Of a stretch of DNA of 46,375 nt, positions 7,467-43,623 are shown in pieces. The DNA comes from Octopus bimaculoides (Eukaryota). Made by a program: the position numbers and the translations under genes. How positions within the stretch are numbered: the stretch's first letter is position 1; each line of letters begins with the position of its first letter. The notes beneath the pieces are model-generated. The model ran no database searches. It saw nothing but the letters and a program-made list of their open reading frames with translations, and was not told the DNA's origin. Location: assembly GCF_001194135.2 (NCBI RefSeq), contig NC_068981.1, positions 199,325,593 through 199,371,967 on the forward strand, read 5' to 3'.

Positions 7467-7675
7467 AAGGGGAAGAAAGAAAGACTCATCGATATTTCCA
7501 TGTGGGGACTAATTTATATATTGAAATCTATGTTGGACAGAGCATGGCTAGGATATAGAAATCTATGAACATCTCAAAGTTTTAGCAAGTCTATACGATC
7601 TAACTATAAAGCAATCGCATCATATTTAAGATACAGGAAACTATCTATGAATGAAACATCACATCGTAGCTAAGA
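7085..7675. repeat. Two degenerate copies of an approximately 125-bp unit flanking a (GA)n tract
   Basis: tttaagatayagg...tctatgaa.gaaacatcacatcgtagctaagat occurs near 7115-7167 and 7625-7675. gaaatctat...catctcaaagt.ttagca occurs near 7171-7200 and 7558-7588. (GA)n spans about 7312-7461. Confidence 0.55.
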
Positions 7676-7818
7676 TTATTATTATTATGATTCAGTAGTC
7701 TTATTTTTATCATATACTTTTATTGCACTACTGAGTGCAACTCTGTGTGCCTTGGGTATGTGCTGTGGTTTGTTGTGGTGCTCTTATTTTCACTGTTTTA
7801 CATAGGATGTGTGCAGTG
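7675..7818 (-). mobile_element. 3'-terminal fragment of a Dong-type LINE with (AAT)n tail
   Basis: Close match to 44423-44580 (tcagtagt.ttatttt...gtatgtgctgtggtttg.tgtg.tgctctta...taggatgtgtgcagtg). (ATT)n lies on both sides. Confidence 0.8.
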
Positions 7819-7840
7819 TATTATTGTTATTATTATTATT

Positions 7841-8194
7841 GAGTGAGAGAGCAGGGCATGCCATCAAAGTGACACCGGGGTAAAATATACAAAGCCCAAT
7901 ATACCCATCATGACTACCTGTCTGATAAGGGTACACCAGGCACATGCATCACAACCATATGTGCACGACATGGTGATCTCATATCAAGATAAACAGTGCA
8001 TGACCTCGCAGGTGGGGCCCAGTTAGAATCTTCTTCAGGTCGAGTAGCCCATCCCGCTCAAAAGGTCCCTGAATAAGGTTTGTTAAGGATGTTGAGCAAA
8101 ACCCCCATGTTTCCAAAGGTGAATTATTCAAACCCCAAAGAACTCCTCTCAACACATGGCTATGATGCTTCCCCACTACTTCTGTTCGTGATCA
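7841..8194 (-). mobile_element. Non-coding dispersed repeat, partial (cut by gap), same family as 24110-24668
   Basis: Colinear with 24110-24470 (gagtgagagag...catgccatc.aagtgacac...cttctcaacacatggctatgatgct). It abuts (ATT)n. Strand inferred from the presumed (AAT)n tail. Confidence 0.75.
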
Positions 8195-11889: not shown

Positions 11890-12203
11890 GTGAGAAGACC
11901 CGGCAAGCCAAGTGAGATCGTTGCCAGTGCCCCTGGACTGGCTCTTGTGTGGGTGGCACATAAGATGTACCATCCTGAGCGTGACCGTTGCCAGTACCGC
12001 CTGACTGGCCTTGTAGGGTTTTCGAGCGAGATCGTTGCCAGTGCCCTTGGACTGGCTCTTGTGCGGGTGGCACATAAAAGACACCATTTCGAGCGTGGCC
12101 GTTTTCGTGCGGGTGACACGTAAAAGCACCCACTACACTCTCTGAGTGGTTGGCGTTAGGAAGGGCATCCAGCTGTAGAAACTCTGCCAAATTAGATTGG
12201 AGC
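11890..12203 (+). mobile_element. Young RTE-tail element with internal 114-bp tandem modules
   Basis: gagatcgttgccagtgccc.tggactggctcttgtg.gggtggcacataa starts at 11914 and again at 12028. It is followed by gtggttggcgttaggaagggcatccagctgtagaaac. CpGs are retained. Confidence 0.75.
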
Positions 12204-18413: not shown

Positions 18414-20285
18414 CACACATATGCATGTGATGACAAAAAGGAACAGACTCCATACAGCATAACTACACATACAGACAGAGAGGGCTACTAATGGGAGTTG
18501 CAAGAGGAGCATTTCATGAAGATCTTTAATAGAAGTGGTTGGTGGGGGTGGGTAGGGTGGCAGAAAGAGGAGGAAAAGGTTCAGATTGCATTGCTATTTT
18601 TCATAAAAATAGTTCTGAAAATTACTTTAAAATTAGAGCATCATCATCACCACCAATAGATTCTCCTCTCCTGCATGCCACATTTAACCCCTCATATGCC
18701 TCACTTTTCTCTCAATACAGTTGTGCTTTGTCCTACATGTGCCCTGATATTGCAAATCCAACGGAGCATACTATGTTCATTCCTCTCCAGTCTATGCATG
18801 GCCTCTGCAGTCAGAGCCCATGTCCCACTATCATGTAATACAGCCGTTCTTACACAGGCATCATACAATCTACCTTTCACTCTGCGAGAGAGAGCCCTCT
18901 TGTGGCCAACAGAAGTAGTAGCTCTCTGAACTTCCTCCATCCTATTCTTATTCTAGAAACAATACTTTCAGAGCATCCACCCCCACCCCCTTTACTAATC
19001 TGGTCACCTAAATAGCAGAAACTATTTACTACCTCAAGAGAGCCTCCTGGGCATTTGAGAGAGTTTAAGTCCCTCGTGCCCTTCGTGCTTATTGTTCCTG
19101 TGCATCTGCCACACATGGAAGCGACCTTATCTGTTAATCTACCTCCAATTCTACTGCATCTCTTATGCATCCTTGACTTACCACCACCACCACCACCACC
19201 ACCACCACCATTATCATTTTCCATTTACCTGATGGAAGGAGAGTCTTGTCTGCTTTCTTGCTAGCAACAACTTTAGTCTTTGCTGAGTTAACTTTAAGGC
19301 CCTTTGATTCTAGGTTTTGCTTCTAGACCCAAAACTTTTTCTACAATTCTGCTTCAGATTCTGCAATAAGAGCAAGATCATCAGCATTTCGTAATTTCCA
19401 TGGGCATCCAGTTTTGAATTGCTCTGTTATGGCCTGGAGGACTATGAGTGAACTAAGAACTGATCCCTGGGGTACTCCAACTTGTACATTAAATTCATCA
19501 CTGTATTCAAGGCCAACAACTCTCACCTTCCTGACAGCCTCGCTGTACATGGCTTGAAAAGCTCTAACAAGCCACTCCTCTACTCCTAGCTTCCTTAGAG
19601 ACCACCAAATAAGAGAGCAGGGAACCTTGTCGAAAGCTTTCTCCAGGTCGACGAAGGCTAAGTACAATGGCTTACTTTTGACCAAATACATTTTTTGCAA
19701 CTGTCTCACTAGGAAGATGGCATCTGTGGTACTTCTGGGAACAAAACAAAACTGCATCTCATGTAGCTTAATTGTATCCCTAATCAGGGACAGAATGAAA
19801 TAAAACTCTTTCTGTAATTTCCATGTCCCGCTCCAGCGGCTTGATACCTCTGTAGTTGTTTCTTTCTAAAGCATCACCTTTATTCTTATGGCAGTTAACT
19901 ATAATGATACTATACTAGTCTTTGGGGGATGATGCCTTCTTGAATAACCTGATTGACTATGTGAGTGACTGGTGAGAATCCCACACAGCCTGATATTTTA
20001 ATCATCTTGGCAGTAATACCCAAAGGTCAGGGGGCTTTCTCTGTCTTCATATCCTTAACTGCTTCATCTTTTATACTTCTATCAACTCTGATGGCTGGTT
20101 CGATATTTGAAAGACTCTCCTTCTCCCAATCATTCTCCACATTTAATAAACTTTCATAATGGCATCTCTACTCATCTTTCTTCTGTGGGTCACCAAGTGC
20201 AAGCATACCATTAGCCATTCGCACACACCTACCACATCTCTATTCCCTCTGATACACTGCTTTGCTCAGATTTGTGCCTCAGAGG
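17505..20285 (-). mobile_element. 5'-truncated RTE-clade LINE (RT, long 3' UTR, (GAT)n tail), interrupted by microsatellites
   Basis: RT motifs STTDAIFLVRQLQ, LAFVDLEKAFDKVP, GVPQGSVLS and ADDLALIAES (19341-19757). FCYLGDQIS (18877-19224). KGRLYDACVRTAVLH (18701-18940). Tail at 17505. Confidence 0.85.
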
Positions 20286-21832: not shown

Positions 21833-23860
21833 CATCATCATCATCATCATCATCATCATTTAACGCCCGTGTTCCATGCTGGCATGGGTAGGATGGTACC
21901 ACAAGAGCCAGCCAGGCTGATGCCTGCACCAGATATCTGTGACTGTTTTCGCAGGATTCTTACAGCTGGATGTCCTTTCCTAACACCAACCACTCAGCAG
22001 AGTGGACTTAGTGCTTTCTATGTGGCACAAGCACAGGCTATGAGGTCAGTTTTGGCCAGGTTTTTACAGCTGGATGCCCTTCCAAATGCCAACCACTTTA
22101 CAATGTGGACTGGATGCTTTTTAAGTGGCACCTTCTGTGACAGGGTCACCAAGTACTTGCAAGGCAAAACCTTTTAAGGGGGGAGGAGGTGATGATGAAA
22201 AGGTTATAGGGAGACAGATACAGGTGTGTAGCTGAAGAGGAAGTACAAAGTTAACTGGCCGGAGAGAGAGAGAGAGAGTTCAGGAATGAAGAGAGAAACA
22301 GGTGTGCTACCGCAAAGAAAATACACAGTTGCTCAAACTGAGGGAAGTGCAGGAGAAGGAAAGAGAGAGAGTGGGAGACAGCAGGATGGAGAGGGTGGCA
22401 AAGTGCTGGGCATGCTTACAAGGGACAGGGATCAGAGTATAAATGAGATGGATGAGTAAAGGAAGAAAGAGATATGGATGGCGGCATACCCTTGAGGTCC
22501 AAATGCCATAATATAAGTGACAGGATATTGTGAAGGGAGTGCAATTAAAGAGTGCAAGTAAGTGGTGAAAGGCCTGGGGATGTATAGAGTTGGGGGGGGG
22601 GGGCTACTGGATAGCAATGATACAGATGAACAGGGGTGTGGGGACAGGATTAGGGAGTGAGAGCTAGGCATAGTGAATGAAGGAAGAAATGTGAGAACGA
22701 GAAGAGATGTAAATTGGTTTGTTGGGGTCAGGTGAGGGAAAAGTTATCTTGTTATGTGTGGGTGGAACACCCAGGTCGGGGGCAGCAGATGGCAATAATA
22801 GAGTGAGACAAGACATGTGGATAGAACGCACAGGTCGGGAGCAAGCAGAGAGCAAGTGGCACCAGGCCAAGAGGACGAGATTGGGGAGTGGGAGGTAATC
22901 AAAGTACATGAATGTACTCTTGCAGAAATGTGAGGAAGAGAAGGGATGTAGGGATGTAATTTGGTTCATTGTGGTAGAATGTGTGAGAATGTGTGAGAAT
23001 GTGTGAGAAGACCCATCCACTGACATGGATGGGTCTTCTCAAGAACTTCATATCACCNNNNNNNNNNNNNNNNNNNNNNNNNNNNNNNNNNNNNNNNNNN
23101 NNNNNNNNNNNNNNNNNNNNNNNNNNNNNNNNNNNNNNNNNNNNNNNNNNNNNNNNNNNNNNNNNNNNNNNNNNNNNNNNNNNNNNNNNNNNNNNNNNNN
23201 NNNNNNNNNNNNNNNNNNNNNNNNNNNNNNNNNNNNNNNNNNNNNNNNNNNNNNNNNNNNNNNNNNNNNNNNNNNNNNNNNNNNNNNNNNNNNNNNNNNN
23301 NNNNNNNNNNNNNNNNNNNNNNNNNNNNNNNNNNNNNNNNNNNNNNNNNGTACATACACATCCAATGGAGCATATTGCCTTCATTTCTCTCCAGTCTACG
23401 CATGTCTTATGCATTCAGTGCCCATGTCTCACTACCATGGCATATAGCTGTTCACACACAGGCATCATATAGTCTACCTTTCACTCTGGGAGAAAGAATC
23501 CTTTTGTTGCCAACAGAGGTAATGGCTCTCTGAACTTCCTCCACCCAATTCTTATTCTAGAAATAATACTTCCAGAGCATCCTCCACCATGGCTAATTTG
23601 GTCACTTGGGAAACAGAAACTGCCTACAACCTCAAGAGAACCTCCTGGATATTTGAAAGAATCTAAGCCCTGTGTGCTCTGAGTGCTTATAGTTCCTGCA
23701 CATCTGCCACATATAAAGACGACTTTATCTGTTAATCTACCTGTGATTCCACTGCATCTCTTACATGTCCATAATCTACACTGGGTGCAGCAAATGGAAT
23801 TACTTCCAACTCCTTTCCTACATATTGAACAATTATTTTCCCTTTGCACTTTTGACTGCA
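21833..23860 (-). mobile_element. 5'-truncated RTE-clade LINE with PHD-type finger, long 3' UTR and (GAT)n tail
   Basis: CSICRKGVGSNSICCTQCRLWTCKRCSG...CGRC...GSFCFPSDQIS...RIRIGWRKFRE (23481-23861). UTR homologous to 30800-31640. Confidence 0.85.
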
Positions 23861-24109: not shown

Positions 24110-24668
24110 GAGTGAGAGAGGGAGCAGTGCATGCCATCGAAGTGACACTGGGGTATAAATATACAAAACTTAATATACCCATCATATCTACCCATTTGAG
24201 GAGGGTACATGTGGCACATGCATCACAACCACGTGTGCACAATATGGTAATCTCATATCCAAATAAATGGTGCATGACCTTGCAGGCGGGGCTCAGTTAA
24301 GAAATTTCAACAGGCTAAGAAGTCCATCCTGTTCAAAAGGTCCTTGATTAGAGCTTGTTTAAGGGTGATGAGTAAAACACCCATGTTTTCAGAGGTGAGT
24401 TATTCAAACCCCAAAGAATCCTTCTCAACACATGGCTATGATGCTCCCCCACTACTTCTGCTCATCATCAGAGATGCACATATTGTCAGCCACCAAGGGA
24501 CATGCTCAACTGGTTAAGGTCAAACAACTGACAAGCAAATCTGTGGTATGGAGCAGAATATTTGCTGTAGGCCATCTTTTTATACCAAGACAAAACCTGC
24601 ACATATTAACACTTCCAATCAGTTAAGATCAGAAACCATGAGAGCAACTGCCTGGTACTGCACCAGGG
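24110..24668 (-). mobile_element. About 560-bp non-coding element embedded in an (ATT)n microsatellite
   Basis: Second copy at 7841-8194. (ATT)n on both sides (about 24099-24109 and 24674-24740). No ORF and no tRNA boxes recognised. Confidence 0.75.
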
Positions 24669-27954: not shown

Positions 27955-28219
27955 AAGCACCATTTGAGCATGGCCATTGCCAGTACTGCGTGACTGGCCC
28001 TCGTACCTGTGGCTGGTAAAAACACCCACTACACTCTCAGTGTGGTTGGCGTTAGGAAGGGCATCCAGCTGTAGAAACTCTGCCAGATCAGATTGGAGCC
28101 TGATGTAGCCATCTGGGTCACCAGTCCTCAGTCAAATCGTCCAACCCATGCTAGCATGGAAAACAGACACTAAACAATGATGATGATGTTGATGACGATG
28201 ATGATGATGATGATGACGA

Positions 28220-31076: not shown

Positions 31077-33405
31077 GCAAACAGAAACAGGTGTACTGCT
31101 GTAAAAGAGATACATGGTTATCCAACCTGAGGGAGGAACAGGGGAAGAAGAGAAAGAGAGAGCGAGAGAGAGAGAGAGTGGGAAATAGCAGGAGAGAGAT
31201 GATGGAAAACTGCCGGGCATAATCACAAGGGATGGGGATCAGAATATAAATGGGATGGTCAAGCAAGAGAAGAGAGAGATGGATGGCAAGTAGCAGAGCA
31301 AGTACCCCTGAGGTACAGAGGTCACAATATAAGTGGCAGGACACTCTCTATCCAAAGAAGCATGAGTAGGGAGTGGGGGGATGGAAGTGGTGAAAACCTG
31401 GGTATATAGAGGCGGGGGTGGAGGGCTACTGGATATCAATGATACAGTGAACAGGGCCTTGAGGACAGGATTGGAGAGCGAGAGACAAGCAAAGTGTGTG
31501 GAAGAGGAGATTGAGGAAGAGAAGAGATGTAGAGGTGTATTTGGTTTGTTGGGGCCAGGATGTGTGAAAGGTTTTCTTGTAATGTTTGGGTGGAACACTT
31601 TGAGAACTCAGTTCCACTGGCATAGGTGAGTCTTCTCAAGAACCTCAAATTGCCAGACACCTCGGTCCATTGTCACTTCCTCCATGAACCCTAATATCCT
31701 GAGATTGGTCCTTACCACTTCATCCCACATCTTTCTGGGTCTACATTTTCTGCAGGTACCCTCCACTTTCAGTGATCAGACTTCTTTATACACTTGTCTT
31801 CATTCATATGCATCACATGTCCAAACCAACATTAGTCTTCTCTCTTGCATTCTACATTTGATTTCTCTTATGACCCACTTTTCTCTCGATACATTTGCAC
31901 TTTGTCCTACATGTGCCCTGATAATGCAAATCCAGTGGAGCATACTGCCTTCATTTCTTTCCAATCTATGCATGTCTTACGCATTCAAAGCCCATGTCCC
32001 ACTATCATGTAATACAGCCGTTCTTACATAAGCATCATAGAGTCTACCTTTCACTCTGAGAGAGAGTCCTTTTGTTGCCAACAGAGGTAATAGTTCTCTG
32101 AACTTTCTCCATCCTATTCTTATTCTAGAAATAATACTCTCAGAGCATCCACCACCATTGCTAATTTGGTCACCTAGGTAACAGAAACTTCCTTGTCATT
32201 TGAGAGAATCTAAGCCCCGTGTGCTCTTAATGCTTATTGTTCCTACACCTCTGCCACATAGGAAGACAACTTTATCTCTTAACCTATCTGTGATTCCACT
32301 ACACCTCTTATGTGTCCATGGTTTACACTGGATGCAGAAAATGGAATTACTTTCAACTCCTTTCCTACATATTGAGCAGGGCCATTTACCTGACAGAAAG
32401 AGAATCTTGTCTGCTTTCTTGTTCACAATAACTTTGGTCTTTCCAACGTTCATTTTAAGACTCTTTGATTCCAGGTTTTGCTTGCATACTTGGAATTTTT
32501 TCTCCAATTCTACTACAGATTCTGCAATAAGAGTGAAGTCACCAGCATAAAGTAGTTCCTGTGGGTGGGTATCCAATCTTGAGTTCCTCTGTTATGGCCT
32601 GGAGGACTATAATGGATAAGAGTGGGCTGAGAACTGAGCTTTGGTGAACCCCTACTTGTTCGCTAAACTCATCACTGTATTCGTGGATGCCTCTCACCTT
32701 ACTGACAGCACCATATTACATGGTTTGGATGGCTCTAACAAGCCACTCCACTACTCCTAGCTTCCTTGGAGACCACCACATAACAATGCAGGGAACTCTG
32801 TTGAAAGCTTTCTCCAGGTCAACAAAAGCTTAGTACAATGACTTACCTTTGGCCAAATACTTTTCCTCGCAGCTGTTTCACTTGGAAGATGGCATCTGTA
32901 GTGCTCTTCCCAAGTACAAAAACCAAACTGCATCTCATCTAGTTCAATTCTATTCCTAATCAATTGAACTTCTCAGTAATTTTCATGACTTGGTCCAGCA
33001 GCTTGATATCTCTGTAGTTGTTTCTTAGTGACTCCTCTACTCTACTAAGCTGTACCCTACAATGCCAGAAATTTTAATCATCTTAGCAGTGATTCCTGAT
33101 GGTCAAGGAGCTTTCCCTGTCTTCATGTCCTTAACTGCTTTATCTATAATGCTGCCATCACCTGTGATGGCTGGTCCCTCAACTGGTTCGATATTTGGTA
33201 GATTCTCCTTCTGCCTTTCATTTTCCACATTTAGTAACCTTTCACAGTGACACTTCCATGCATCTTTCTTCTCGGAGTCACTAAGTGCAAGCATACCATT
33301 ATCCATCCGCACACATTTCTCACCTACCACACATCTATTTTCTCTGCTTTGCAATCCTGAACACCTTGTGCCTCTGACCTCCGATCCTCATGCTGTAGGA
33401 CATTT
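30514..33405 (-). mobile_element. 5'-truncated RTE-clade LINE, longest copy (linker, RT with PHD finger, about 1.1-kb 3' UTR, (GAT)n tail)
   Basis: VVGEKCVRMDNG...KTGKAP (33103-33354); MQFGF and downstream motifs (32757-32963); YAGDFTLIAES...KTKV...CSICRKGVESNSIFCIQCKPWTHKRCSG (32196-32576). Frameshifted, with the catalytic YADD mutated. Confidence 0.9.
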
Positions 33406-34283
33406 GCATTTAGTGTGAAAATTCTTGAGGAGAGGGAAGGAAAAGAAAGATGAGAGGAAAAGGTAAAGAATTGAAACAAAATAAAATAAAACGAGAGATT
33501 GAAAAATCAGGTAGAGGCAAAACAAATTAGGGGTGGGGGATGGTCCGTGCACTGCCAAGAAAATGGTTTTGGATTACAAAACCTAAGCTAAAGATAATGT
33601 GCACTGTATAGTTGTAGTATAGGCAATAAACCATGTAAACTTAAAGCTATGCCCCCATCATTATTCAAATGAGGTTCAGTAAAGCAATGAAGTATCCAGT
33701 TACATGATCTTAAAATTGAGTTCAAAATACGATGTCACCGTATCACTAGTCCATAGTAACCACTTGTAAAATAAATTTCACTCAGAGACTCTTTGACACA
33801 AATACATACATAAATATCATCCAGTTACATGATAAAACGTAAAACTTTATGTATTCTACGTTTACAAGCCAAAGTCATTCGAGAATTCCTATTCAGAATC
33901 GTTTATCTAAAACGTTCAACAATACTTCAGTTGTGCATAAATCGTTTTATCTTTAATTGTTGTCTTCTATGACGTTTACCAAAATCTTCCATTGCATCGC
34001 TTAATGTTTCTTTCTTCCAAACACTATGTATAGACCGTAAGCAGAGTCGTACGCTTTCTAGCCAGGTTCTGAAATGAACGTTTATAATATCTGTTTTATA
34101 TCTTTTAGCTTTTAAACCTACTTAAACCCGTCTAGCGGCACGGGTCTTAGTCGTATATTCCACATTGTAAATTAAAGTTCATATTTAAAGTCAAAATGTT
34201 TATATTAATATGATTGCATAAATAGAAAAAAATTATTATTTCTAAATCTCTGAACGAGAAACATTCAGTAACAGTACTCTAGA

Positions 34284-34840
34284 GTAAAGATTATTTGCCA
34301 ACAGAATGTGGCAGTCCTAATTAGGACGAATATTTCAGTTATTTAGCCCCAGGAAACATCGTCTGCAGCTGGCTATCAAGGCACTAACTGCGTACGTATA
34401 TTTTCTAACAAGGAAGTTTACTGTCCCCACTCAGTTCGAAAGCAATATCTGTGTACCAATGGTTTCTGGGTTATTTCTCTTCATCAACACAGAATAACTG
34501 TTCGGCCAGAGATGGCGATACTGAATTCTTATTCGAAATATATACTTTTCAAAGTGACACACAGTTACTGATCTCATAAATAGAAAAATTATTATTTCTA
34601 AATCGTCGCCACCTCTAGCTGAGCAGTTATTCTGTGTTGATGAAGATAAATAACCTAGAAACCATTGGTACACAGATATTGATTCAGAGCTGAGTGGGGA
34701 CACGAAGCTCCCTTGTTCGAAAATATAAGGATGCAAATAGTGCGTCGATAGCCAGCTGCAGACGATGTTTCTTGGGGCTAAATAACAGAGATATTCGTCC
34801 TAATCAGGACTGTCACATTATGTTGGCAAATAATCTTTAC
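34284..34840. repeat. 557-bp fold-back (MITE-like) with about 235-bp inverted arms and an 87-bp spacer
   Basis: 34284-34518 is colinear with the reverse complement of 34606-34840, at roughly 85% identity by eye. Ends are gtaaagattatttgccaaca...tgttggcaaataatctttac. Confidence 0.9.
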
Positions 34841-35023
34841 AATATAATTGCAGTTTTGAAATAAATAAGGTTTGACTGTAGTATTAGAGACTGTTAACAT
34901 AACCTCATCCAAAAATTGGAAACGAGAAACTAAGATCAACGATTTATGTAGTTTACAGTTTCTAATAAAAACAAAATAAATATATTGAGTATTCATCTCT
35001 CTTCTCGTTCCTTCTTGTTCACA

Positions 35024-35070
<47 letters not shown>

Positions 35071-35589
35071 CGTGTGTGTTCAAGTATTTTGCTGCTGACT
35101 ACAGTTTGTTTTAATCCGTAGACAATACGAAGCAATGAATGATTTTTATATTTTACAAATAGGAAGAGGAAAGTCGAAAAATTACAAGGGTTAAGCACGT
35201 TGGTGTTTGTTTACGGTATAAATTCCTAATAAGATACTTAGATCGAATCAGTAACAGTTAAATTTCAAGCAAAAAGTTCCTTTAATTTGGTGGAAATTAA
35301 TGAGAAAGATAAACAAATAAATTAGGGACACGAAATGTAATGATTTATTGCTGTTTGGTTTTGTCTTTTGGGAGAACAGAATCGAAGAAATTAAGAAAAA
35401 AAGGGGAATAAATCAGAACGAAGGAAAGAGACTCTTATAATAAATTTTCCTTTCTTACTTTCTCTGTTATTTCTTTTTCTCTTTCTTTCTTCTGTTTTTG
35501 CTTTTCTATCAAGCTTCAATTTAGATTGAGATTTCACCTTGTCAAGCTGACTTTTATCTCACAACTTTGTTTATAAAATATTGAAGTGT

Positions 35590-37297: not shown

Positions 37298-37739
37298 ATG
37301 GATTGTCCGTTTAAAAACAAAATGTGCTATAGTTGTCAGAAGCTGGGACACAAGAGTTCTTATTGGAGAACAAGACTACGAGGTTCGAACACAGAAAGTT
37401 CAGCGGTGAGTAATTGCGATGGAAAAACAAGAAAATTCGTGCATGTAAAAATTAATGATGTGAATACCAAATTACAGTTAGACACAGGTAGTGACATCTC
37501 GATTATAAATGCGGATACTTGGAAAAAAATTAGTAAACCGAGATTACGCAAAACAGCGAAAATAGCAAGTGGCGTAAGGGGTGATAAATTACATTTCATA
37601 GGTAAAACATGTATCGACGTTACATTTCGAGGAGAGACACACGAAGCAAAATTATTCATTGTGGATAACACAGTCAATCTGTTTGACACAGATTGGTTTG
37701 AACTATTCGATTTATGGCTCCTCTGTAGTGATGTCAGTA
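37298..37739 (+). pseudogene. gag: Gypsy gag zinc knuckle and aspartic protease remnant
   Basis: CYSCQKLGHKSSYW (CCHC with the last C lost); LQLDTGSDISII (DTG active site); NLFDTDWFELF. Confidence 0.85.
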
Positions 37740-38228
37740 TGTGACAACCTACAATTTTACAATTACATGCGACAAGGAAAATAAGAACTTGTGAGACGGT
37801 CATAATAAGTCATAACATATTTATTACTGGATGTAATGCGTTAACATATAAGAATGGTTTGAAAGAAAAGGCTTGTAACATACTACATGAACATACTTTG
37901 CAATCATGTCTCAAAGCAAATGAGGCGAATATGCGCGCATGTGGGTGTGATTGTGAGTGGGGTGGCTCAATGCGTACGACCAGGAACCGACAGGCAAAAG
38001 TAGTGCGAAGTTAGAAATGCGTCCGCTTTATATAAGGGACGAACTGGAAGTCCCTGGCTACCACGTCATCTGGAAGTTAAAGCTTCTAGAATATCCGAGA
38101 ATTTTCGAGAATGTCGAGGGAGATTACTCTCGTTAGATCCCTTTTTCGTTTTGCTTTCCTGCTTGATTGCCAGGGGTCATTACACTTCCCCATAAATCTT
38201 TACTGCAATAACATAAATGGTTGTCACG
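37740..38228 (-). mobile_element. 489-bp solo-LTR-like insertion between protease and RT
   Basis: Termini TGTGACAACC...GGTTGTCACG form a 10-bp inverted repeat with one terminal mismatch. On the minus strand there is TATATAAA (38034-38027) and AATAAA (37825-37820). Removing the insert rejoins the protease frame to the RT frame. Confidence 0.75.
38027..38112 (-). promoter_or_regulatory. Heat-shock element, UPRE/CRE-like site and TATA box
   Basis: 38083-38112 reads cTTCt aGAAt aTCCg aGAAt tTTCg aGAAt (six alternating pentamers, five perfect). TGACGTGG lies at 38068-38061 and TATATAAA at 38034-38027. Confidence 0.6.
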
Positions 38229-38272
38229 TTAAAAACAAGTCTTCGGAATAACTGAAAGAAATATTGAAATAA

Positions 38273-40600
38273 ATGTCCCCGCAGTTGTTATCAGAGGATT
38301 TAGGTCTATATAGAAAGACGGAAGCCTATTTCCTAATAAGTGAAAACGTTGTAACTGTATTTAAAGCAAGCAGAAAAGTACCGTTCGTGGCAATTGAAAC
38401 CATAAATGAAGAATTGGACAGACTCAGAAAGAGGAGAGTCATCAAAAAGGTGGATTACTCGAAGTGGGCGGCATCCACGGAATGTATTAAAGAAATAATA
38501 AGAGCAGACTGTGTGCCGATTTCGCTACAGGATTGAACGATTGCTTGAAAACATACCACCATCCACTCCCGACTGCAGAGGACATTTTTTCAAAGTTAAA
38601 TGGTGGAAAGATTTTTTCCAAATTAGATCTGTCTGAAGCCTATTTACAGATTAAAATAAATGACAAATGCTCAAATAATTTGACAATAAATACATACAGA
38701 GGATTGTATAGATACACGCTATTACCATTTGGATTAAAAGTTGCACCAGCAATATTCCAGCAAATCATGGATACTATGTTATCTGATTGTGAATTTACAA
38801 TCCTGTACTTGGACGATATTTTGAGTAATTCTTGTGAACAGCACGTGGAACACATAAAAGCTATGTTTAAGAAAAGTTTTCGGGTTCACTTTGAGTGAAG
38901 AAAAATGCGAATTCTTTCTAGCCCAAAATGAATACTTCGGGCAAATAGTTGATAAAAGTGGTAGACGTCCTGGCCCGTCGAGGTCAGACGCAATGAGGAA
39001 TATACCTTCGCCGACAAATATTCCAACTTTACAAGCATTTCTTGGCTTGGCAAACAATTAGCATTTCTTGGCTTGGCAAACAATTAGCATTTCTTGGCTT
39101 GGCAAACAATTATCAAAACTACATTCCTAATATGCACAAGTTAAGAACACCATTGAACGACTTACTAAAGAAAGGAGTAAAGTGGAATTGGTCCACAAAG
39201 GGCCAAAACACTTTTGAAGAAATAAAAGAAATTTCTAATCTCAGACCTGTTTTTAGCACATTACGATCCTAAAATGGACATCATTGTAGCGTCTGATGCT
39301 TCCAAGCACTGATTAGGTGCAGTTCTACTTCATAAATATGAAGACTGAAATACAAAACCAGTGGTTCATGTTTCGAGCTCGCTAATAGCAGCAGAGAAGA
39401 GATATAGTCAAATTGAAAAGGAGGCCCCTAGCAATTATTTTTGCAGTTAAAAGTTCCACAGGTTTCTGTATGGCAGAAGGTTTTTATTGCAATCAGATCA
39501 TAGACCTTTGCTGTCGATTTATGGGTTTAAAAGAGAGTTACTGGCTCATACTACGAACCGCTTGCAACATTGGGGTGTAATATTACTAAATTATAATTTC
39601 AAAATGCAATACATTCCACCGAAAATAAAAATCAGTCATGTGGACTGCCTTTCGAGATTAATTAAAAAAAAATATGGAACCACTAGAACTAGAAGAGACT
39701 GTTATAGCCACACTGCTGGCAGACAGTGAAATTAAAAGTGTTATGACGAACGTTATCCAAGAACTACCAGTGATAGCACAGGATACAAGAATGAAAGCTG
39801 TAGGTGATGAGTATATTACGTAAATGAAAGAAGCTTTAAAAAATAAACTGAATAAAAATTCAGATGCCAATAGTTTTTCAATTTGCAACGATATTCTGAT
39901 GTATTCCCATAGAGCGGTGGTTCCAGCTACATTACAAAAAGGTGTATGGCAACAATTTCACAGCGGACATCCAGGAATGGCAAGAATGAAGGGTCTGATA
40001 AGGAGTTATGTCTATTGACTGTCTATGGAACGAGATATCGTAAACTCATTGAGAACGTGCCGAGGTTGTGCACTTACGGCCAAAGCCCCACCAGTAAAAT
40101 ATCAATCGTGGCCAGAGGCGGAGAACCAATGGTCTAGGTTACACATTGACTATACCGACCCAGTAAACGGCACTTACTACCTAATCGTAGTAGATAGCCG
40201 TACAAGTGACCAGAGGTTTGCAGGATTTATAGACCAATCTGTAAAACAACTATAAAGTTCTTATACGAATTGTTTGCGCGATATGATGTCCCTGACACAT
40301 TAGTTTCAGACAATGGAACGCAGTTCTCTGGGTATGAATTCAAGAACTTCTGTAAAAGGCATGCGATAAAGTATATTTTCACTCTACCTTACCACCCGAG
40401 GTCAAACGGGTCAGGTAGAAAGATTTGTGGACACTTTTAAGAGAGCATTAAGAAAAGCAAGAAATAAATTAAGTAACAACGAAGTACTGACAAATTTCTG
40501 AAGAATATACAGATTGACCCCCAATTCAAGTACAAATTCAGGGAAGTCTCCCACAGAATTGATGTTCGCAAGAATAATATCTATTTTTGTTAAGCTATAA
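38273..40600 (+). pseudogene. pol: Gypsy pol remnant (RT, RNase H, integrase)
   Basis: RT: PLPTAEDIF, FSKLDLSEAYLQ, PFGLKVAPAIFQ, YLDD. RNase H: DAS, YSQIEKE, SDHRPL. Integrase: HSGHPGM...CRGC, LHIDY, SDNGTQF, PYHPRSNG...ERFV.TFK. Confidence 0.9.
39035..39112. repeat. Perfect 26-bp triplication inside pol
   Basis: gcatttcttggcttggcaaacaatta x3, at 39035, 39061 and 39087. Confidence 0.95.
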
Positions 40601-40683: not shown

Positions 40684-40987
40684 TGGTGACCCTGTCCATG
40701 CAGGTGCCACTTAAAAAGCATCCAGTCCACACTGTAAAGTAGTTGGTGTTTGGAAGGGCACCCAGCGGTAAAAACCCTGCCAAAACTGACCTCTCCTGTA
40801 CTTGTGCCACGTAAAAAGCATTCAGTCCACTCTGCTGAGTGGTCGGTGTTAGGAAGGGTGTCCAGCTGTAAAAATCCTGCCAAAACAGTCACAGAAGTCT
40901 AGTGCAAGCTTCTGCCTGGCCGGCTCCTGTCAAACCATCCCACCCATGCCAGTATGGAAGGCAAGCATTAAACAATGATGATGATAA
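40684..40987 (+). mobile_element. RTE 3' tail copy truncating the gypsy element
   Basis: Two ggaagggy.yccagc.gtaaaaa modules, then ccatcccacccatgccagtatgg...(GAT)n. Confidence 0.75.
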
Positions 40988-41041: not shown

Positions 41042-41385
41042 GAGTTTCAGTCATTAGAGTCTCAGTCATTAGAGTCTCAGTCATTAGAGTCTCAGTCATT
41101 AGAGTCACAGTTACCAGAATCTCATTCATTAGAGTCTCAGTCATTAGAGTCTCAGTCATTGGAGTCTCAGTCATTGGAGTCTCAGTCATTAGGGCCCCAG
41201 TCATTAGAGTCACAGTTACCAGAATCTCATTCATTAGAGTCTCATTCATTAGAGTCTCAGTCATTGGAGTCTCAGTCATTGGAGTCTCAGTTATTGGAGT
41301 CTCAGTTATTAGAATCTCAGTCATTAGAGTCTCATTCATTAGAGTCTCAGTCATTAGAGTCTTATTCATTAGAGTCTCAGTCATT
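41042..41385. repeat. 15-bp minisatellite, about 23 units
   Basis: Unit agagtctcagtcatt with variants. The diagnostic variant pair recurs 105 bp apart. Confidence 0.95.
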
Positions 41386-43379: not shown

Positions 43380-43623
43380 ATGTGTCCTACACCTGGCCGA
43401 AAAGGTGTAAAAGAAGGAACTGAACGCAAACCAACCTCGTTTGTACGAGTGCCACATAAAAAGCACTCAGCCCACTCTATGGAGTGGTCAGTGTTTGGAA
43501 GGGCACCCAGTTGTAAAAACCTTGCCAAAACACACCCAGGAGCATGGTTCAGGTTCCCATCTGGCCATCTGTCAAATCATCCAACCCCTACCAGCACGGA
43601 AATCAGACGTTAAATGATGATGA
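43380..43623 (+). mobile_element. RTE 3' tail copy, tail-to-tail with a Dong fragment
   Basis: gtgccacataaaaagcactcag...ggaagggcacccagttgtaaaaac...cagacgttaaatgatgatga, merging into (ATT)n. Confidence 0.7.

What the first reader, a model, noticed from the sequence alone, without database searches (positions are those of the whole stretch)
38027..38112. Solo LTR with a heat-shock element, UPRE and TATA in series: a candidate proteotoxic-stress promoter
Seen, on the LTR sense (minus) strand: six contiguous alternating nGAAn/nTTCn pentamers (38112-38083, five perfect), then GATGACGTGG (38070-38061), then TATATAAA (38034-38027), and AATAAA about 200 bp further on. Established: three or more alternating nGAAn units bind HSF1 trimers; TGACGTGG is the UPRE bound by XBP1s/ATF6; heat-activated LTRs are known, e.g. 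ONSEN in Arabidopsis. Inference: this LTR family responds to both cytosolic and ER stress, and its solo copies may scatter heat-inducible promoters. Here it would transcribe antisense into the host gypsy gag.
Basis: partly seen in the sequence, partly recalled or inferred. Interest (0 to 1): 0.75.

Follow-up and report, generated by a model that had tools for sequence, protein, structure and literature searches.

The report
Octopus solo LTR carrying a heat-shock element
A 461-bp leftover end (solo LTR) of a retrotransposon in an octopus genome carries a textbook heat-shock-factor binding site just upstream of its own TATA box, so it is a credible but untested heat-inducible promoter of a kind already shown in a plant and a flatworm; the added "ER-stress" reading rests on one 8-base match that is no rarer than chance.

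Summary
All four motifs are at the stated coordinates on the minus strand. The element is a 461-bp solo LTR (38184→37724) with TG…CA ends and a 4-bp target duplication (CCTC/CTTC). Removing it restores the host frame and the residue spacing seen in homologues. It lies between the protease and RT of a degenerate Ty3/gypsy-type pol, not in gag, in an Octopus-lineage genome.

The six-unit HSE (one perfect trimer site plus an extension) is expected about 0.005 times per window and is the only HSE-grade site in 46 kb. It ends 48 bp upstream of the TATA. TGACGTGG is not significant alone (1 observed, 0.43 expected), is a generic ACGT-core bZIP site, and has no ERSE partner.

The HSF-responsive reading is plausible. 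Heat-activated, HSE-bearing LTR families are proven in Arabidopsis (ONSEN) and the flatworm Macrostomum lignano.

The two decisive tests could not be run. No other copy of the LTR could be retrieved from any collection.

Verdict: real observation, partly supported interpretation, probable new member of a known kind.

The parts
37724..38184 (-). Solo LTR, 461 bp, sense on the minus strand (5' TGTAATGA ... TCACTACA 3')
   Evidence: TG..CA ends with a 7/8 terminal inverted repeat, a flanking 4-bp duplication, and TATA followed by AATAAA on the same strand. Removal restores the host ORF and the homologue spacing.
37720..37723 (.). Target-site duplication, left copy (CCTC on + strand)
   Evidence: Together with 38185-38188 (CTTC) it matches 3/4. 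Removing LTR plus 4 bp takes out 465 bp and keeps host frame 2.
38185..38188 (.). Target-site duplication, right copy (CTTC on + strand)
38083..38112 (-). Heat-shock element: six alternating nTTCn/nGAAn units, five perfect. It reads as three 10-bp units ATTCTCGAAA/ATTCTCGGAT/ATTCTAGAAG. LTR positions 73-102.
   Evidence: Expected 0.005 per window.
38098..38112 (-). Perfect trimeric HSE core nTTCnnGAAnnTTCn (ATTCTCGAAAATTCT)
   Evidence: The only perfect 3-unit HSE in the window. It meets the regular-expression definition used in PMC6927752 and PMC12801592.
38061..38070 (-). GATGACGTGG: ACGT-core bZIP site with the sequence of the mammalian UPRE (TGACGTGG). LTR positions 115-124.
   Evidence: Not above chance on its own.
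38044..38051 (-). ACTTCCAG, second of two identical 8-mers flanking the bZIP site. It overlaps a kappaB-like GGGACTTCC.
   Evidence: Meaning untested.
38070..38077 (-). ACTTCCAG, first copy
38027..38034 (-). TATA box TATATAAA (LTR 151-158), 48 bp downstream of the HSE's 3' edge
37999..38009 (-). Predicted transcription start zone (A at 38004 is 30 nt from the first T of the TATA), the U3/R border. Inferred, not observed.
   Evidence: Spacing rule only. No RNA data available.
37820..37825 (-). AATAAA polyadenylation signal (LTR 360-365). The R/U5 border is expected about 15-25 nt further on.
   Evidence: No AATAAA or ATTAAA on the opposite strand of the LTR.
37298..37723 (+). Host element, upstream part: CCHC zinc knuckle and aspartic protease (DTGS) of a degenerate Ty3/gypsy-type pol
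   Evidence: Asp_protease_2, gag-asp_proteas
38189..40500 (+). Host element, downstream part: RT, RNase H and integrase core, with several stops and frameshifts
   Evidence: RVT_1 1.7e-15, RT_RNaseH 5e-17, rve 1.8e-7. Relatives in Octopus.

Best explanation
This is a solo LTR left by an unidentified LTR retrotransposon family. A 4-bp target duplication is typical of Ty3/gypsy- or Bel-like integrases. It inserted, in antisense orientation, between the protease and reverse transcriptase of an older, now degenerate, gypsy-type element in an Octopus-lineage genome. Its layout is U3 (about 180 bp), R (about 200 bp) and U5 (about 80 bp). U3 carries, 48-77 bp upstream of the TATA box, one perfect HSF-trimer site extended by three more in-phase units, two of them perfect, which is room for a second, cooperatively bound trimer. 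The most likely mechanism has four steps. On proteotoxic or heat stress, HSF1 trimers bind this array. They recruit the transcription machinery to the TATA-directed core promoter. Transcription starts near 38004 and runs on the minus strand. RNAs either end at the LTR's own AATAAA (about 200-nt R-U5 transcripts) or read through antisense into the host protease and gag. In the parent element the same module would give heat-boosted genomic RNA, as in ONSEN and the M. lignano Ty3 families. Shown here: the insertion limits, the orientation signals, the HSE and its rarity, the host identity and the taxon. Inferred: HSF binding, the start site, inducibility, and that the HSE is a family trait and not a private feature of this copy. 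The GATGACGTGG site is best read as a generic CRE/ATF-type bZIP site of unknown partner.
For: The motifs and coordinates were read directly. HSE rarity: 0.27 expected for the 4-unit pattern, 0.005 for the 6-unit array with at least 5 perfect units, and it is the only perfect 3-unit site in 46 kb. The LTR limits are verified by frame restoration and homologue spacing FDLW-xx-P(I/L)N. TATA and AATAAA lie on the same strand, with none of the latter on the other strand. The host is PR-RT-RNaseH-IN. The Octopus lineage follows from the best named relatives and shared repeats. CpG observed/expected is 1.01 in the LTR against 0.35 in the window, and four of its CpGs lie inside the HSE and the bZIP site, so the motifs have not decayed. 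Precedent and base rate: in M. lignano, 6 of 137 LTR families have canonical HSEs, 4 of those 6 are induced more than 250-fold, and HSE mutation abolishes induction (PMC12801592). ONSEN is a further precedent (PMC13602373).
Against: Only one copy is known. No family alignment could be made, so conservation of the HSE is untested. The three 10-bp units are 7-8/10 identical, including non-core positions, so the array may be a local triplication private to this copy. In M. lignano, 2 of 6 HSE-bearing families were not heat-induced (PMC12801592). The copy is nested in dead transposon sequence and may be silenced. At genome scale (Gb), a few hundred arrays of this quality are expected by chance.
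Confidence: 0.5

Rival explanations
1. Inert relic with an accidental HSE. The LTR is real, but the pentamer array arose in this copy, or a small subfamily, by slippage or triplication of a 10-bp unit that happened to contain TTCnnGAA. It is not a selected family feature, and the nested copy is transcriptionally silent.
For: The three 10-bp units share 7-8/10 positions, including the 'n' positions 1 and 5. Only one copy is seen. The copy sits inside degenerate transposon sequence. Many such arrays are expected by chance across a Gb-sized genome (extrapolated).
Against: The array sits exactly where LTR enhancers sit, 48-77 bp upstream of the TATA in U3, on a 461-bp target. That gives a probability of roughly 5e-5 for an array of this quality by the rate. 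Its CpGs are intact. Duplication of enhancer motifs in U3 is itself a common route by which LTR promoters evolve (general knowledge), so a duplication origin does not argue against function.
Confidence: 0.3
2. Dual-stress promoter. The HSE (HSF1) and UPRE (XBP1s/ATF6) together make the LTR family respond to both cytosolic and ER proteotoxic stress.
For: The exact TGACGTGG octamer lies 13 bp after the HSE and 26 bp before the TATA. The literature calls this octamer the UPRE, preferentially bound by XBP1s (PMC8301375).
Against: The octamer is not rarer than chance in the window. XBP1 is a CREB/ATF bZIP that binds CRE-like ACGT-core sites, so many bZIPs could use it (PMC8301375). There is no CCAAT or ATTGG partner for an ERSE or ERSE-II. 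The UPRE definition is mammalian and untested in cephalopods. No family or expression data exist.
Confidence: 0.1
3. Ordinary LTR promoter driven mainly by other factors (bZIP/CRE, ETS- or Rel-like sites at the duplicated ACTTCCAG / GGGACTTCC). The HSE contributes little, and expression is tissue-specific or constitutive, not stress-induced.
For: U3 holds two identical ACTTCCAG words flanking the bZIP site and a 9/10 kappaB-like GGGACTTCCA. In M. lignano, two HSE-bearing families were not heat-induced (PMC12801592).
Against: These extra motifs are short, were matched from memory and were not tested statistically. The HSE is by far the strongest and rarest signal in the LTR.
Confidence: 0.07
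4. Not an LTR at all, but a short non-autonomous DNA transposon with TGT...ACA ends and a 4-bp duplication (Ginger-like), so the TATA and AATAAA are incidental.
For: Ginger-type transposons also make 4-bp duplications and have TGT termini (general knowledge). No paired-LTR parent was found.
Against: The terminal inverted repeat is only 8 bp (7/8), far shorter than in such transposons. The TATA-to-AATAAA arrangement on one strand, with U3/R/U5 proportions, is what an LTR needs.
Confidence: 0.03

Closest known systems
HSE-bearing Ty3/Mdg4 LTR retrotransposon families of the flatworm Macrostomum lignano (Mlig-id115|Mag, id36/id55|CsRN1, id38|Gmr1/Osvaldo; PMC12801592)
   Same: A spiralian animal host. 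Canonical nTTCnnGAAnnTTCn motifs lie inside the LTR upstream of the start site and TATA, with one to four HSEs per LTR. The 4-bp duplication here fits the Ty3-type superfamily. Those authors explicitly predict more such cases across the tree of life.
   Different: There, the HSEs are present in family consensuses, induction above 250-fold was measured, and HSE mutation abolished it in transgenic animals. Here there is one solo copy, the superfamily of the parent is unknown, and there is no expression or family evidence. The host is a cephalopod mollusc.
ONSEN (ATCOPIA78), heat-activated Ty1/copia element of Arabidopsis (PMC13602373)
   Same: A cluster of nTTCn/nGAAn units in the LTR acts as the HSF entry point. 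The ONSEN 49-mer has five HSE-like cores. This LTR has five perfect cores plus one imperfect core, all in phase.
   Different: ONSEN is in a plant, belongs to the copia superfamily, binds HSFA2 and shows demonstrated transposition after heat. None of this was tested here.
Helitron-borne HSEs in Caenorhabditis (PMC6927752)
   Different: Helitrons are rolling-circle DNA transposons and supply enhancer-like HSEs to nearby genes. Here the HSE comes with its own TATA promoter in an LTR, and dispersal is unproven.
Mammalian UPRE (TGACGTGG/A; XBP1s target; PMC8301375)
   Same: Identical octamer.
   Different: The UPRE is defined functionally in mammals. Here there is only a sequence match that is not above chance, with no ERSE partner and an unknown binding factor in cephalopods.
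HSF1 acting on the HIV-1 LTR (PMC3152347)
   Same: A retroviral-type LTR promoter positively regulated by cellular HSF1.
   Different: That is an exogenous vertebrate retrovirus with a different site architecture. It is cited only as a mechanistic precedent.

Membership tests
Solo LTR of an LTR retrotransposon | 5' TG ... CA 3' termini forming a short inverted repeat | tested here: met
   TGTAATGA ... TCACTACA, 7/8 inverted
Solo LTR of an LTR retrotransposon | Short (4-6 bp) target-site duplication directly flanking the element, with a precise empty site | tested here: met
   CCTC/CTTC (3/4). Removing 461+4 bp restores host frame 2 and gives FDLWLLPINLY, matching FDLW-xx-P(I/L)N in P0001, P0002, P0005 and P0037.
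Solo LTR of an LTR retrotransposon | U3-R-U5 signals: promoter (TATA) followed by a poly(A) signal on the same strand | tested here: met
   TATATAAA at LTR 151-158 and AATAAA at 360-365. There is no poly(A) signal on the other strand.
Solo LTR of an LTR retrotransposon | Other copies exist, including full-length elements with two such LTRs flanking PBS, gag-pol and PPT | tested here: inconclusive
   No second copy in the window. No hits in the metagenome, viral or prokaryote-genome DNA scans, nor among proteins called over any frame. No cephalopod genome can be searched by DNA with these tools.
Heat-shock element (HSF binding site) | At least three contiguous, alternately inverted nGAAn units (NGAANNTTCNNGAAN or its complement; PMC6927752, PMC12801592) | tested here: met
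   ATTCTCGAAAATTCT is perfect (38112-38098), extended in phase by CGGAT-ATTCT-AGAAG.
Heat-shock element (HSF binding site) | Occurrence beyond chance and promoter-proximal position | tested here: met
   0.005 expected per window for the 6-unit array and 0.27 for the 4-unit pattern. It lies 48-77 bp upstream of the TATA.
Heat-shock element (HSF binding site) | Bound by HSF1 trimers; confers heat-inducible transcription | not testable with these tools
There are no binding data.
HSE-bearing heat-activated LTR retrotransposon families (ONSEN, M. lignano Ty3 families) | HSE present in the family consensus LTR, not just one copy | tested here: inconclusive
   Family members could not be collected.
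HSE-bearing heat-activated LTR retrotransposon families (ONSEN, M. lignano Ty3 families) | Strong transcriptional induction by heat that depends on intact HSEs | not testable with these tools
   No RNA data were accessible. A reporter experiment is required.
UPRE / ER-stress response elements | Sequence TGACGTGG/A (PMC8301375) | tested here: met
   TGACGTGG at 38068-38061
UPRE / ER-stress response elements | Match exceeds chance, or is backed by companion elements (ERSE CCAAT-N9-CCACG, ERSE-II ATTGG-N-CCACG) | tested here: not met
   1 observed against 0.43 expected, and 36% of shuffles have at least one. For TGACGTGR, 1 against 1.13. No CCAAT or ATTGG anywhere in the LTR.
UPRE / ER-stress response elements | XBP1s/ATF6 binding and induction by ER stress | not testable with these tools
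   No expression or binding data. The factor specificity of ACGT-core sites in cephalopods is unknown.

The most novel reading that the evidence does not exclude
The HSE, and with it the adjacent ACGT-core bZIP site, is conserved across a young, recently active octopus LTR family. That would make it the first cephalopod or mollusc lineage, and a further independent case after ONSEN and the M. lignano Ty3 families, of LTR retrotransposons hijacking the heat-shock response. It would add a second stress input (UPR/ATF-type), and its solo LTRs would have seeded heat-inducible promoters across the octopus genome.
Probability: 0.08. Interest if true: 0.65.

Novelty: new member of a known kind. Interest (0 to 1): 0.35.

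Why it matters
If the HSE is a family trait and is functional, octopus would join Arabidopsis and a flatworm as a host in which LTR retrotransposons independently captured the heat-shock response. That would support the view that this is a recurrent strategy of mobile elements. It would also be relevant to how ocean warming might mobilise transposons, or switch on scattered LTR promoters, in a transposon-rich cephalopod genome. Practically, a compact 180-bp U3 with HSE and TATA could serve as a native heat-inducible promoter for cephalopod transgenesis. If it is a private accident of one dead copy, it has no consequence.

Tried and rejected
No run ids were obtained. I did not pass it a raw accession seen elsewhere.
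2. Exact-product look-ups of window ORFs spanning the LTR junctions, 37298-37744(+) and 37360-37803(-): not on record.
3. Protein-handle fishing for other LTR copies, using a 59-aa stop-free frame over the TATA-UPRE-HSE region and five of the six LTR reading frames concatenated (the sixth frame's only long stop-free stretch was the query): no hits.
4. DNA pattern scans: HSE plus UPRE architecture in metagenome, viral and prokaryote-genome collections; TATA-core anchor; LTR 5' end; R-region anchor. All returned zero.
5. BLAST of the LTR against about 65 kb of fetched octopod or other loci (L001-L004): only chance matches.
6. Sensitive self-search of the window with blastn word size 7 and nhmmer: only the copy itself.
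7. Rfam scan of the window: nothing.
8. Considered and rejected: a plant ABRE/Hex reading of TGACGTGG, because the genome is a cephalopod's; a STAT/GAS reading of the TTC..GAA units, because the spacing is 2 nt and not 3-4; the opposite orientation of the LTR, because there is no poly(A) signal on that strand; Inr/DPE calls around the predicted start, because the matches are too weak to report.
9. The host element's own LTRs were looked for and not found in the window.

Full report
OBSERVATION. On the minus strand the window reads ...CTCGAC ATTCT CGAAA ATTCT CGGAT ATTCT AGAAG CTTTAACTTCCA GATGACGTGG TAGCCAGGGACTTCCAGTTCGTCCCT TATATAAA GCGG.... The six in-phase pentamers occupy 38112-38083. Five are perfect nTTCn/nGAAn and the fourth is nGGAn. 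GATGACGTGG is at 38070-38061, TATATAAA at 38034-38027 and AATAAA at 37825-37820.

IS IT MORE THAN CHANCE? A four-unit HSE pattern with at most one mismatch occurs only here in the 46-kb window, against 0.27 expected. In 1,000 first-order Markov sequences of window size, a six-unit array with at least five perfect units appeared 0.005 times per sequence. The perfect three-unit site at 38112-38098 is the only one in the real window, against 0.69 expected. So the HSE is a real outlier. At the scale of a multi-Gb genome, however, a few hundred such arrays are still expected by chance. TGACGTGG is different: one hit against 0.43 expected, and 36 of 100 shuffles have at least one. With the TGACGTGR consensus the figures are 1 against 1.13. 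Its only claim to attention is its position between the HSE and the TATA.

WHAT THE ELEMENT IS. The + strand on both sides encodes one degenerate retroelement polyprotein in a single frame. Up to 37723 it has a CCHC knuckle and a DTGS aspartic protease. From about 38190 onward it has RT, RNase H and an integrase core. Between them lie 461 bp that begin TGTAATGA and end TCACTACA on the minus strand (7/8 inverted), flanked by CCTC and CTTC. Removing 461+4 bp, which is 155 codons, restores the frame and gives ...DWFELFDLWLLPINLYCNN... Four homologues read FDLW-(D/E)(L/K)-P-(I/L)N at that point, with exactly two residues between W and P. The limits of the insertion are therefore verified to the base. 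A TATA at LTR position 151 followed by AATAAA at 360 gives a plausible U3 of about 180 bp, R of about 200 bp and U5 of about 80 bp, and the other strand has no poly(A) signal. TG..CA ends, a 4-bp duplication and this layout identify a solo LTR. The gag nucleocapsid knuckle lies about 400 bp downstream in the LTR's transcriptional direction.

TAXON. The best named relatives of the host element are from Octopus sinensis, O. bimaculoides (72% identity over half the query) and Argonauta. The window's short interspersed repeats match an O. sinensis chromosome locus at 75-88% identity. The window is an Octopus-lineage genome assembly with N gaps and abundant microsatellites.

ANATOMY OF U3. The HSE (LTR 73-102) reads as three 10-bp units, ATTCTCGAAA / ATTCTCGGAT / ATTCTAGAAG. 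They are 7-8/10 identical to each other, including the non-core positions 1 and 5. This suggests an origin by tandem triplication, a common way for LTR enhancers to grow (general knowledge). It also means the array could be private to this copy. Two identical ACTTCCAG words (LTR 108-115 and 134-141) flank the bZIP site (117-124), and the second overlaps a kappaB-like GGGACTTCC. The HSE's 3' edge is 48 bp, and its centre 63.5 bp, upstream of the TATA. That places it roughly at -80 to -110 from the predicted start, a normal position for heat-shock promoters (general knowledge). The LTR has a CpG observed/expected ratio of 1.01, against 0.35 for the window and 0.75-0.89 for the host element, which puts it in the top 5% of 461-bp tiles. 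Three CpGs lie in the HSE and one in the bZIP site. The motifs have therefore not been eroded, which fits a comparatively recent insertion or an absence of germline methylation.

MECHANISM PROPOSED. The best-supported reading is that HSF1 trimers bind the perfect trimer site, and cooperatively its extension, on proteotoxic or heat stress. They would then drive the TATA-directed promoter, with a start near 38004. Transcripts would run on the minus strand, end after the LTR's AATAAA, or read through antisense into the host protease and gag. Insertion limits, orientation signals, motif quality and rarity are shown. Binding, start site, inducibility and family conservation are inferred.

The inference rests on strong precedent. 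In Macrostomum lignano, 6 of 137 LTR families carry canonical HSEs in their consensus LTRs. Four of those six are induced more than 250-fold at 37 °C, and mutating the HSEs abolishes induction in vivo. Two single-HSE families were not induced (PMC12801592). ONSEN in Arabidopsis is the classical case, and its 49-bp HSE region has five HSE-like cores (PMC13602373). Helitrons spread HSEs in Caenorhabditis (PMC6927752). HSF1 also acts on the HIV-1 LTR (PMC3152347).

THE UPRE CLAIM. The literature does call TGACGTGG/A the UPRE and says it is preferentially bound by XBP1s, while ATF6 uses ERSE and ERSE-II with NF-Y. XBP1 is a CREB/ATF-family bZIP that binds CRE-like ACGT-core sites (PMC8301375). The LTR has no CCAAT or ATTGG for an ERSE, and the octamer is not above chance. 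I therefore read it as a generic bZIP site. The 'dual cytosolic plus ER stress' idea is possible but weakly founded, at about 0.1.

WHAT COULD NOT BE DONE. (a) Family conservation: no second copy exists in the window. No protein was called over any tested frame of any copy in the 5.8-billion-protein collection. Seven DNA pattern scans with four different anchors returned zero hits, and about 65 kb of fetched loci contained nothing. None of the DNA collections holds cephalopod genomes. Because read laying takes ids issued by that tool, I did not use it. Exact look-ups of junction-spanning ORFs found nothing.

COMPARISON AND NOVELTY. In the library searched, nothing links octopus or mollusc LTR elements with HSEs. 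The flatworm paper states that more such acquisitions are to be expected across the tree of life. This is therefore at most a new member of a known kind, a candidate cephalopod example, and not a new mechanism.

My estimates are: solo LTR about 0.9; the sequence is able to bind HSF1 about 0.7; the HSE is a family feature giving heat induction in vivo about 0.4-0.5; this nested copy is itself active about 0.2; a functional UPR input about 0.1.

VERDICT. Interest is moderate to low (0.35) until the family alignment and heat-stress RNA data are in.

Noticed in passing
window 37709-37717 and 38190-38198: The insertion site is a near-perfect palindrome: GATTTATGG ... CCATAAATC, with 9/9 inverted arms and a 7-nt spacer (CTCCTCC) in the reconstructed empty site. 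The 4-bp duplication sits almost exactly at its centre. Both arms are coding (D-L-W and I-N-L) in the host. This fits the weakly palindromic target preference of retroviral-type integrases, but it is a single case.
   Followed up: partly
window 38044-38055 and 38070-38077 (minus strand): Two identical ACTTCCAG words, 26 bp apart, flank the bZIP site in U3. The proximal one is part of AGGGACTTCCAG, a 9/10 match to the kappaB consensus GGGRNWYYCC (recalled from memory) and also ETS-like (GGAAGT). Not tested statistically.
   Followed up: no
window 39034-39112: A perfect threefold tandem repeat of a 26-bp unit (AGCATTTCTTGGCTTGGCAAACAATT, 100% matches) inside the host element's RT-RNase H linker, repeating the conserved 'FLGLANNY' motif region. 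It is either a very recent duplication or an assembly artefact.
   Followed up: no
window 41042-41385: A 15-bp minisatellite (GAGTCTCAGTCATTA, about 23 copies) with a 105-bp higher-order period, just downstream of the host element's integrase.
   Followed up: no
window 12105-12203, 21945-22131, 28001-28099, 40704-40891, 43449-43536 and others: Many copies of a SINE-like unit of about 100 bp (…GGCGTTAGGAAGGGCATCCAGCTGTAGAAAC…), 75-90% alike and also present in the O. sinensis locus L001. This was the main evidence for the Octopus lineage.
   Followed up: partly
window 18660-20230 vs 31836-33315; 7675-8194 vs 24157-24470: Paralogous LINE-like segments (with RT ORF fragments) in direct orientation at 78-86% identity, about 13 kb and 16 kb apart. 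They are several copies of the same non-LTR families within one window.
   Followed up: no
window 33700-35100: A stretch with CpG observed/expected of 1.2-1.67, the highest in the window (window mean 0.35), next to a LINE RT fragment. Possibly another young insertion. Not examined.
   Followed up: no
window 37360-37803 (minus strand): A 147-codon ORF starts at an ATG in the LTR's U5 and runs antisense through the host protease. It is almost certainly spurious, but it would be the first ORF on any read-through transcript from this LTR. It is not on record in the protein collection.
   Followed up: partly
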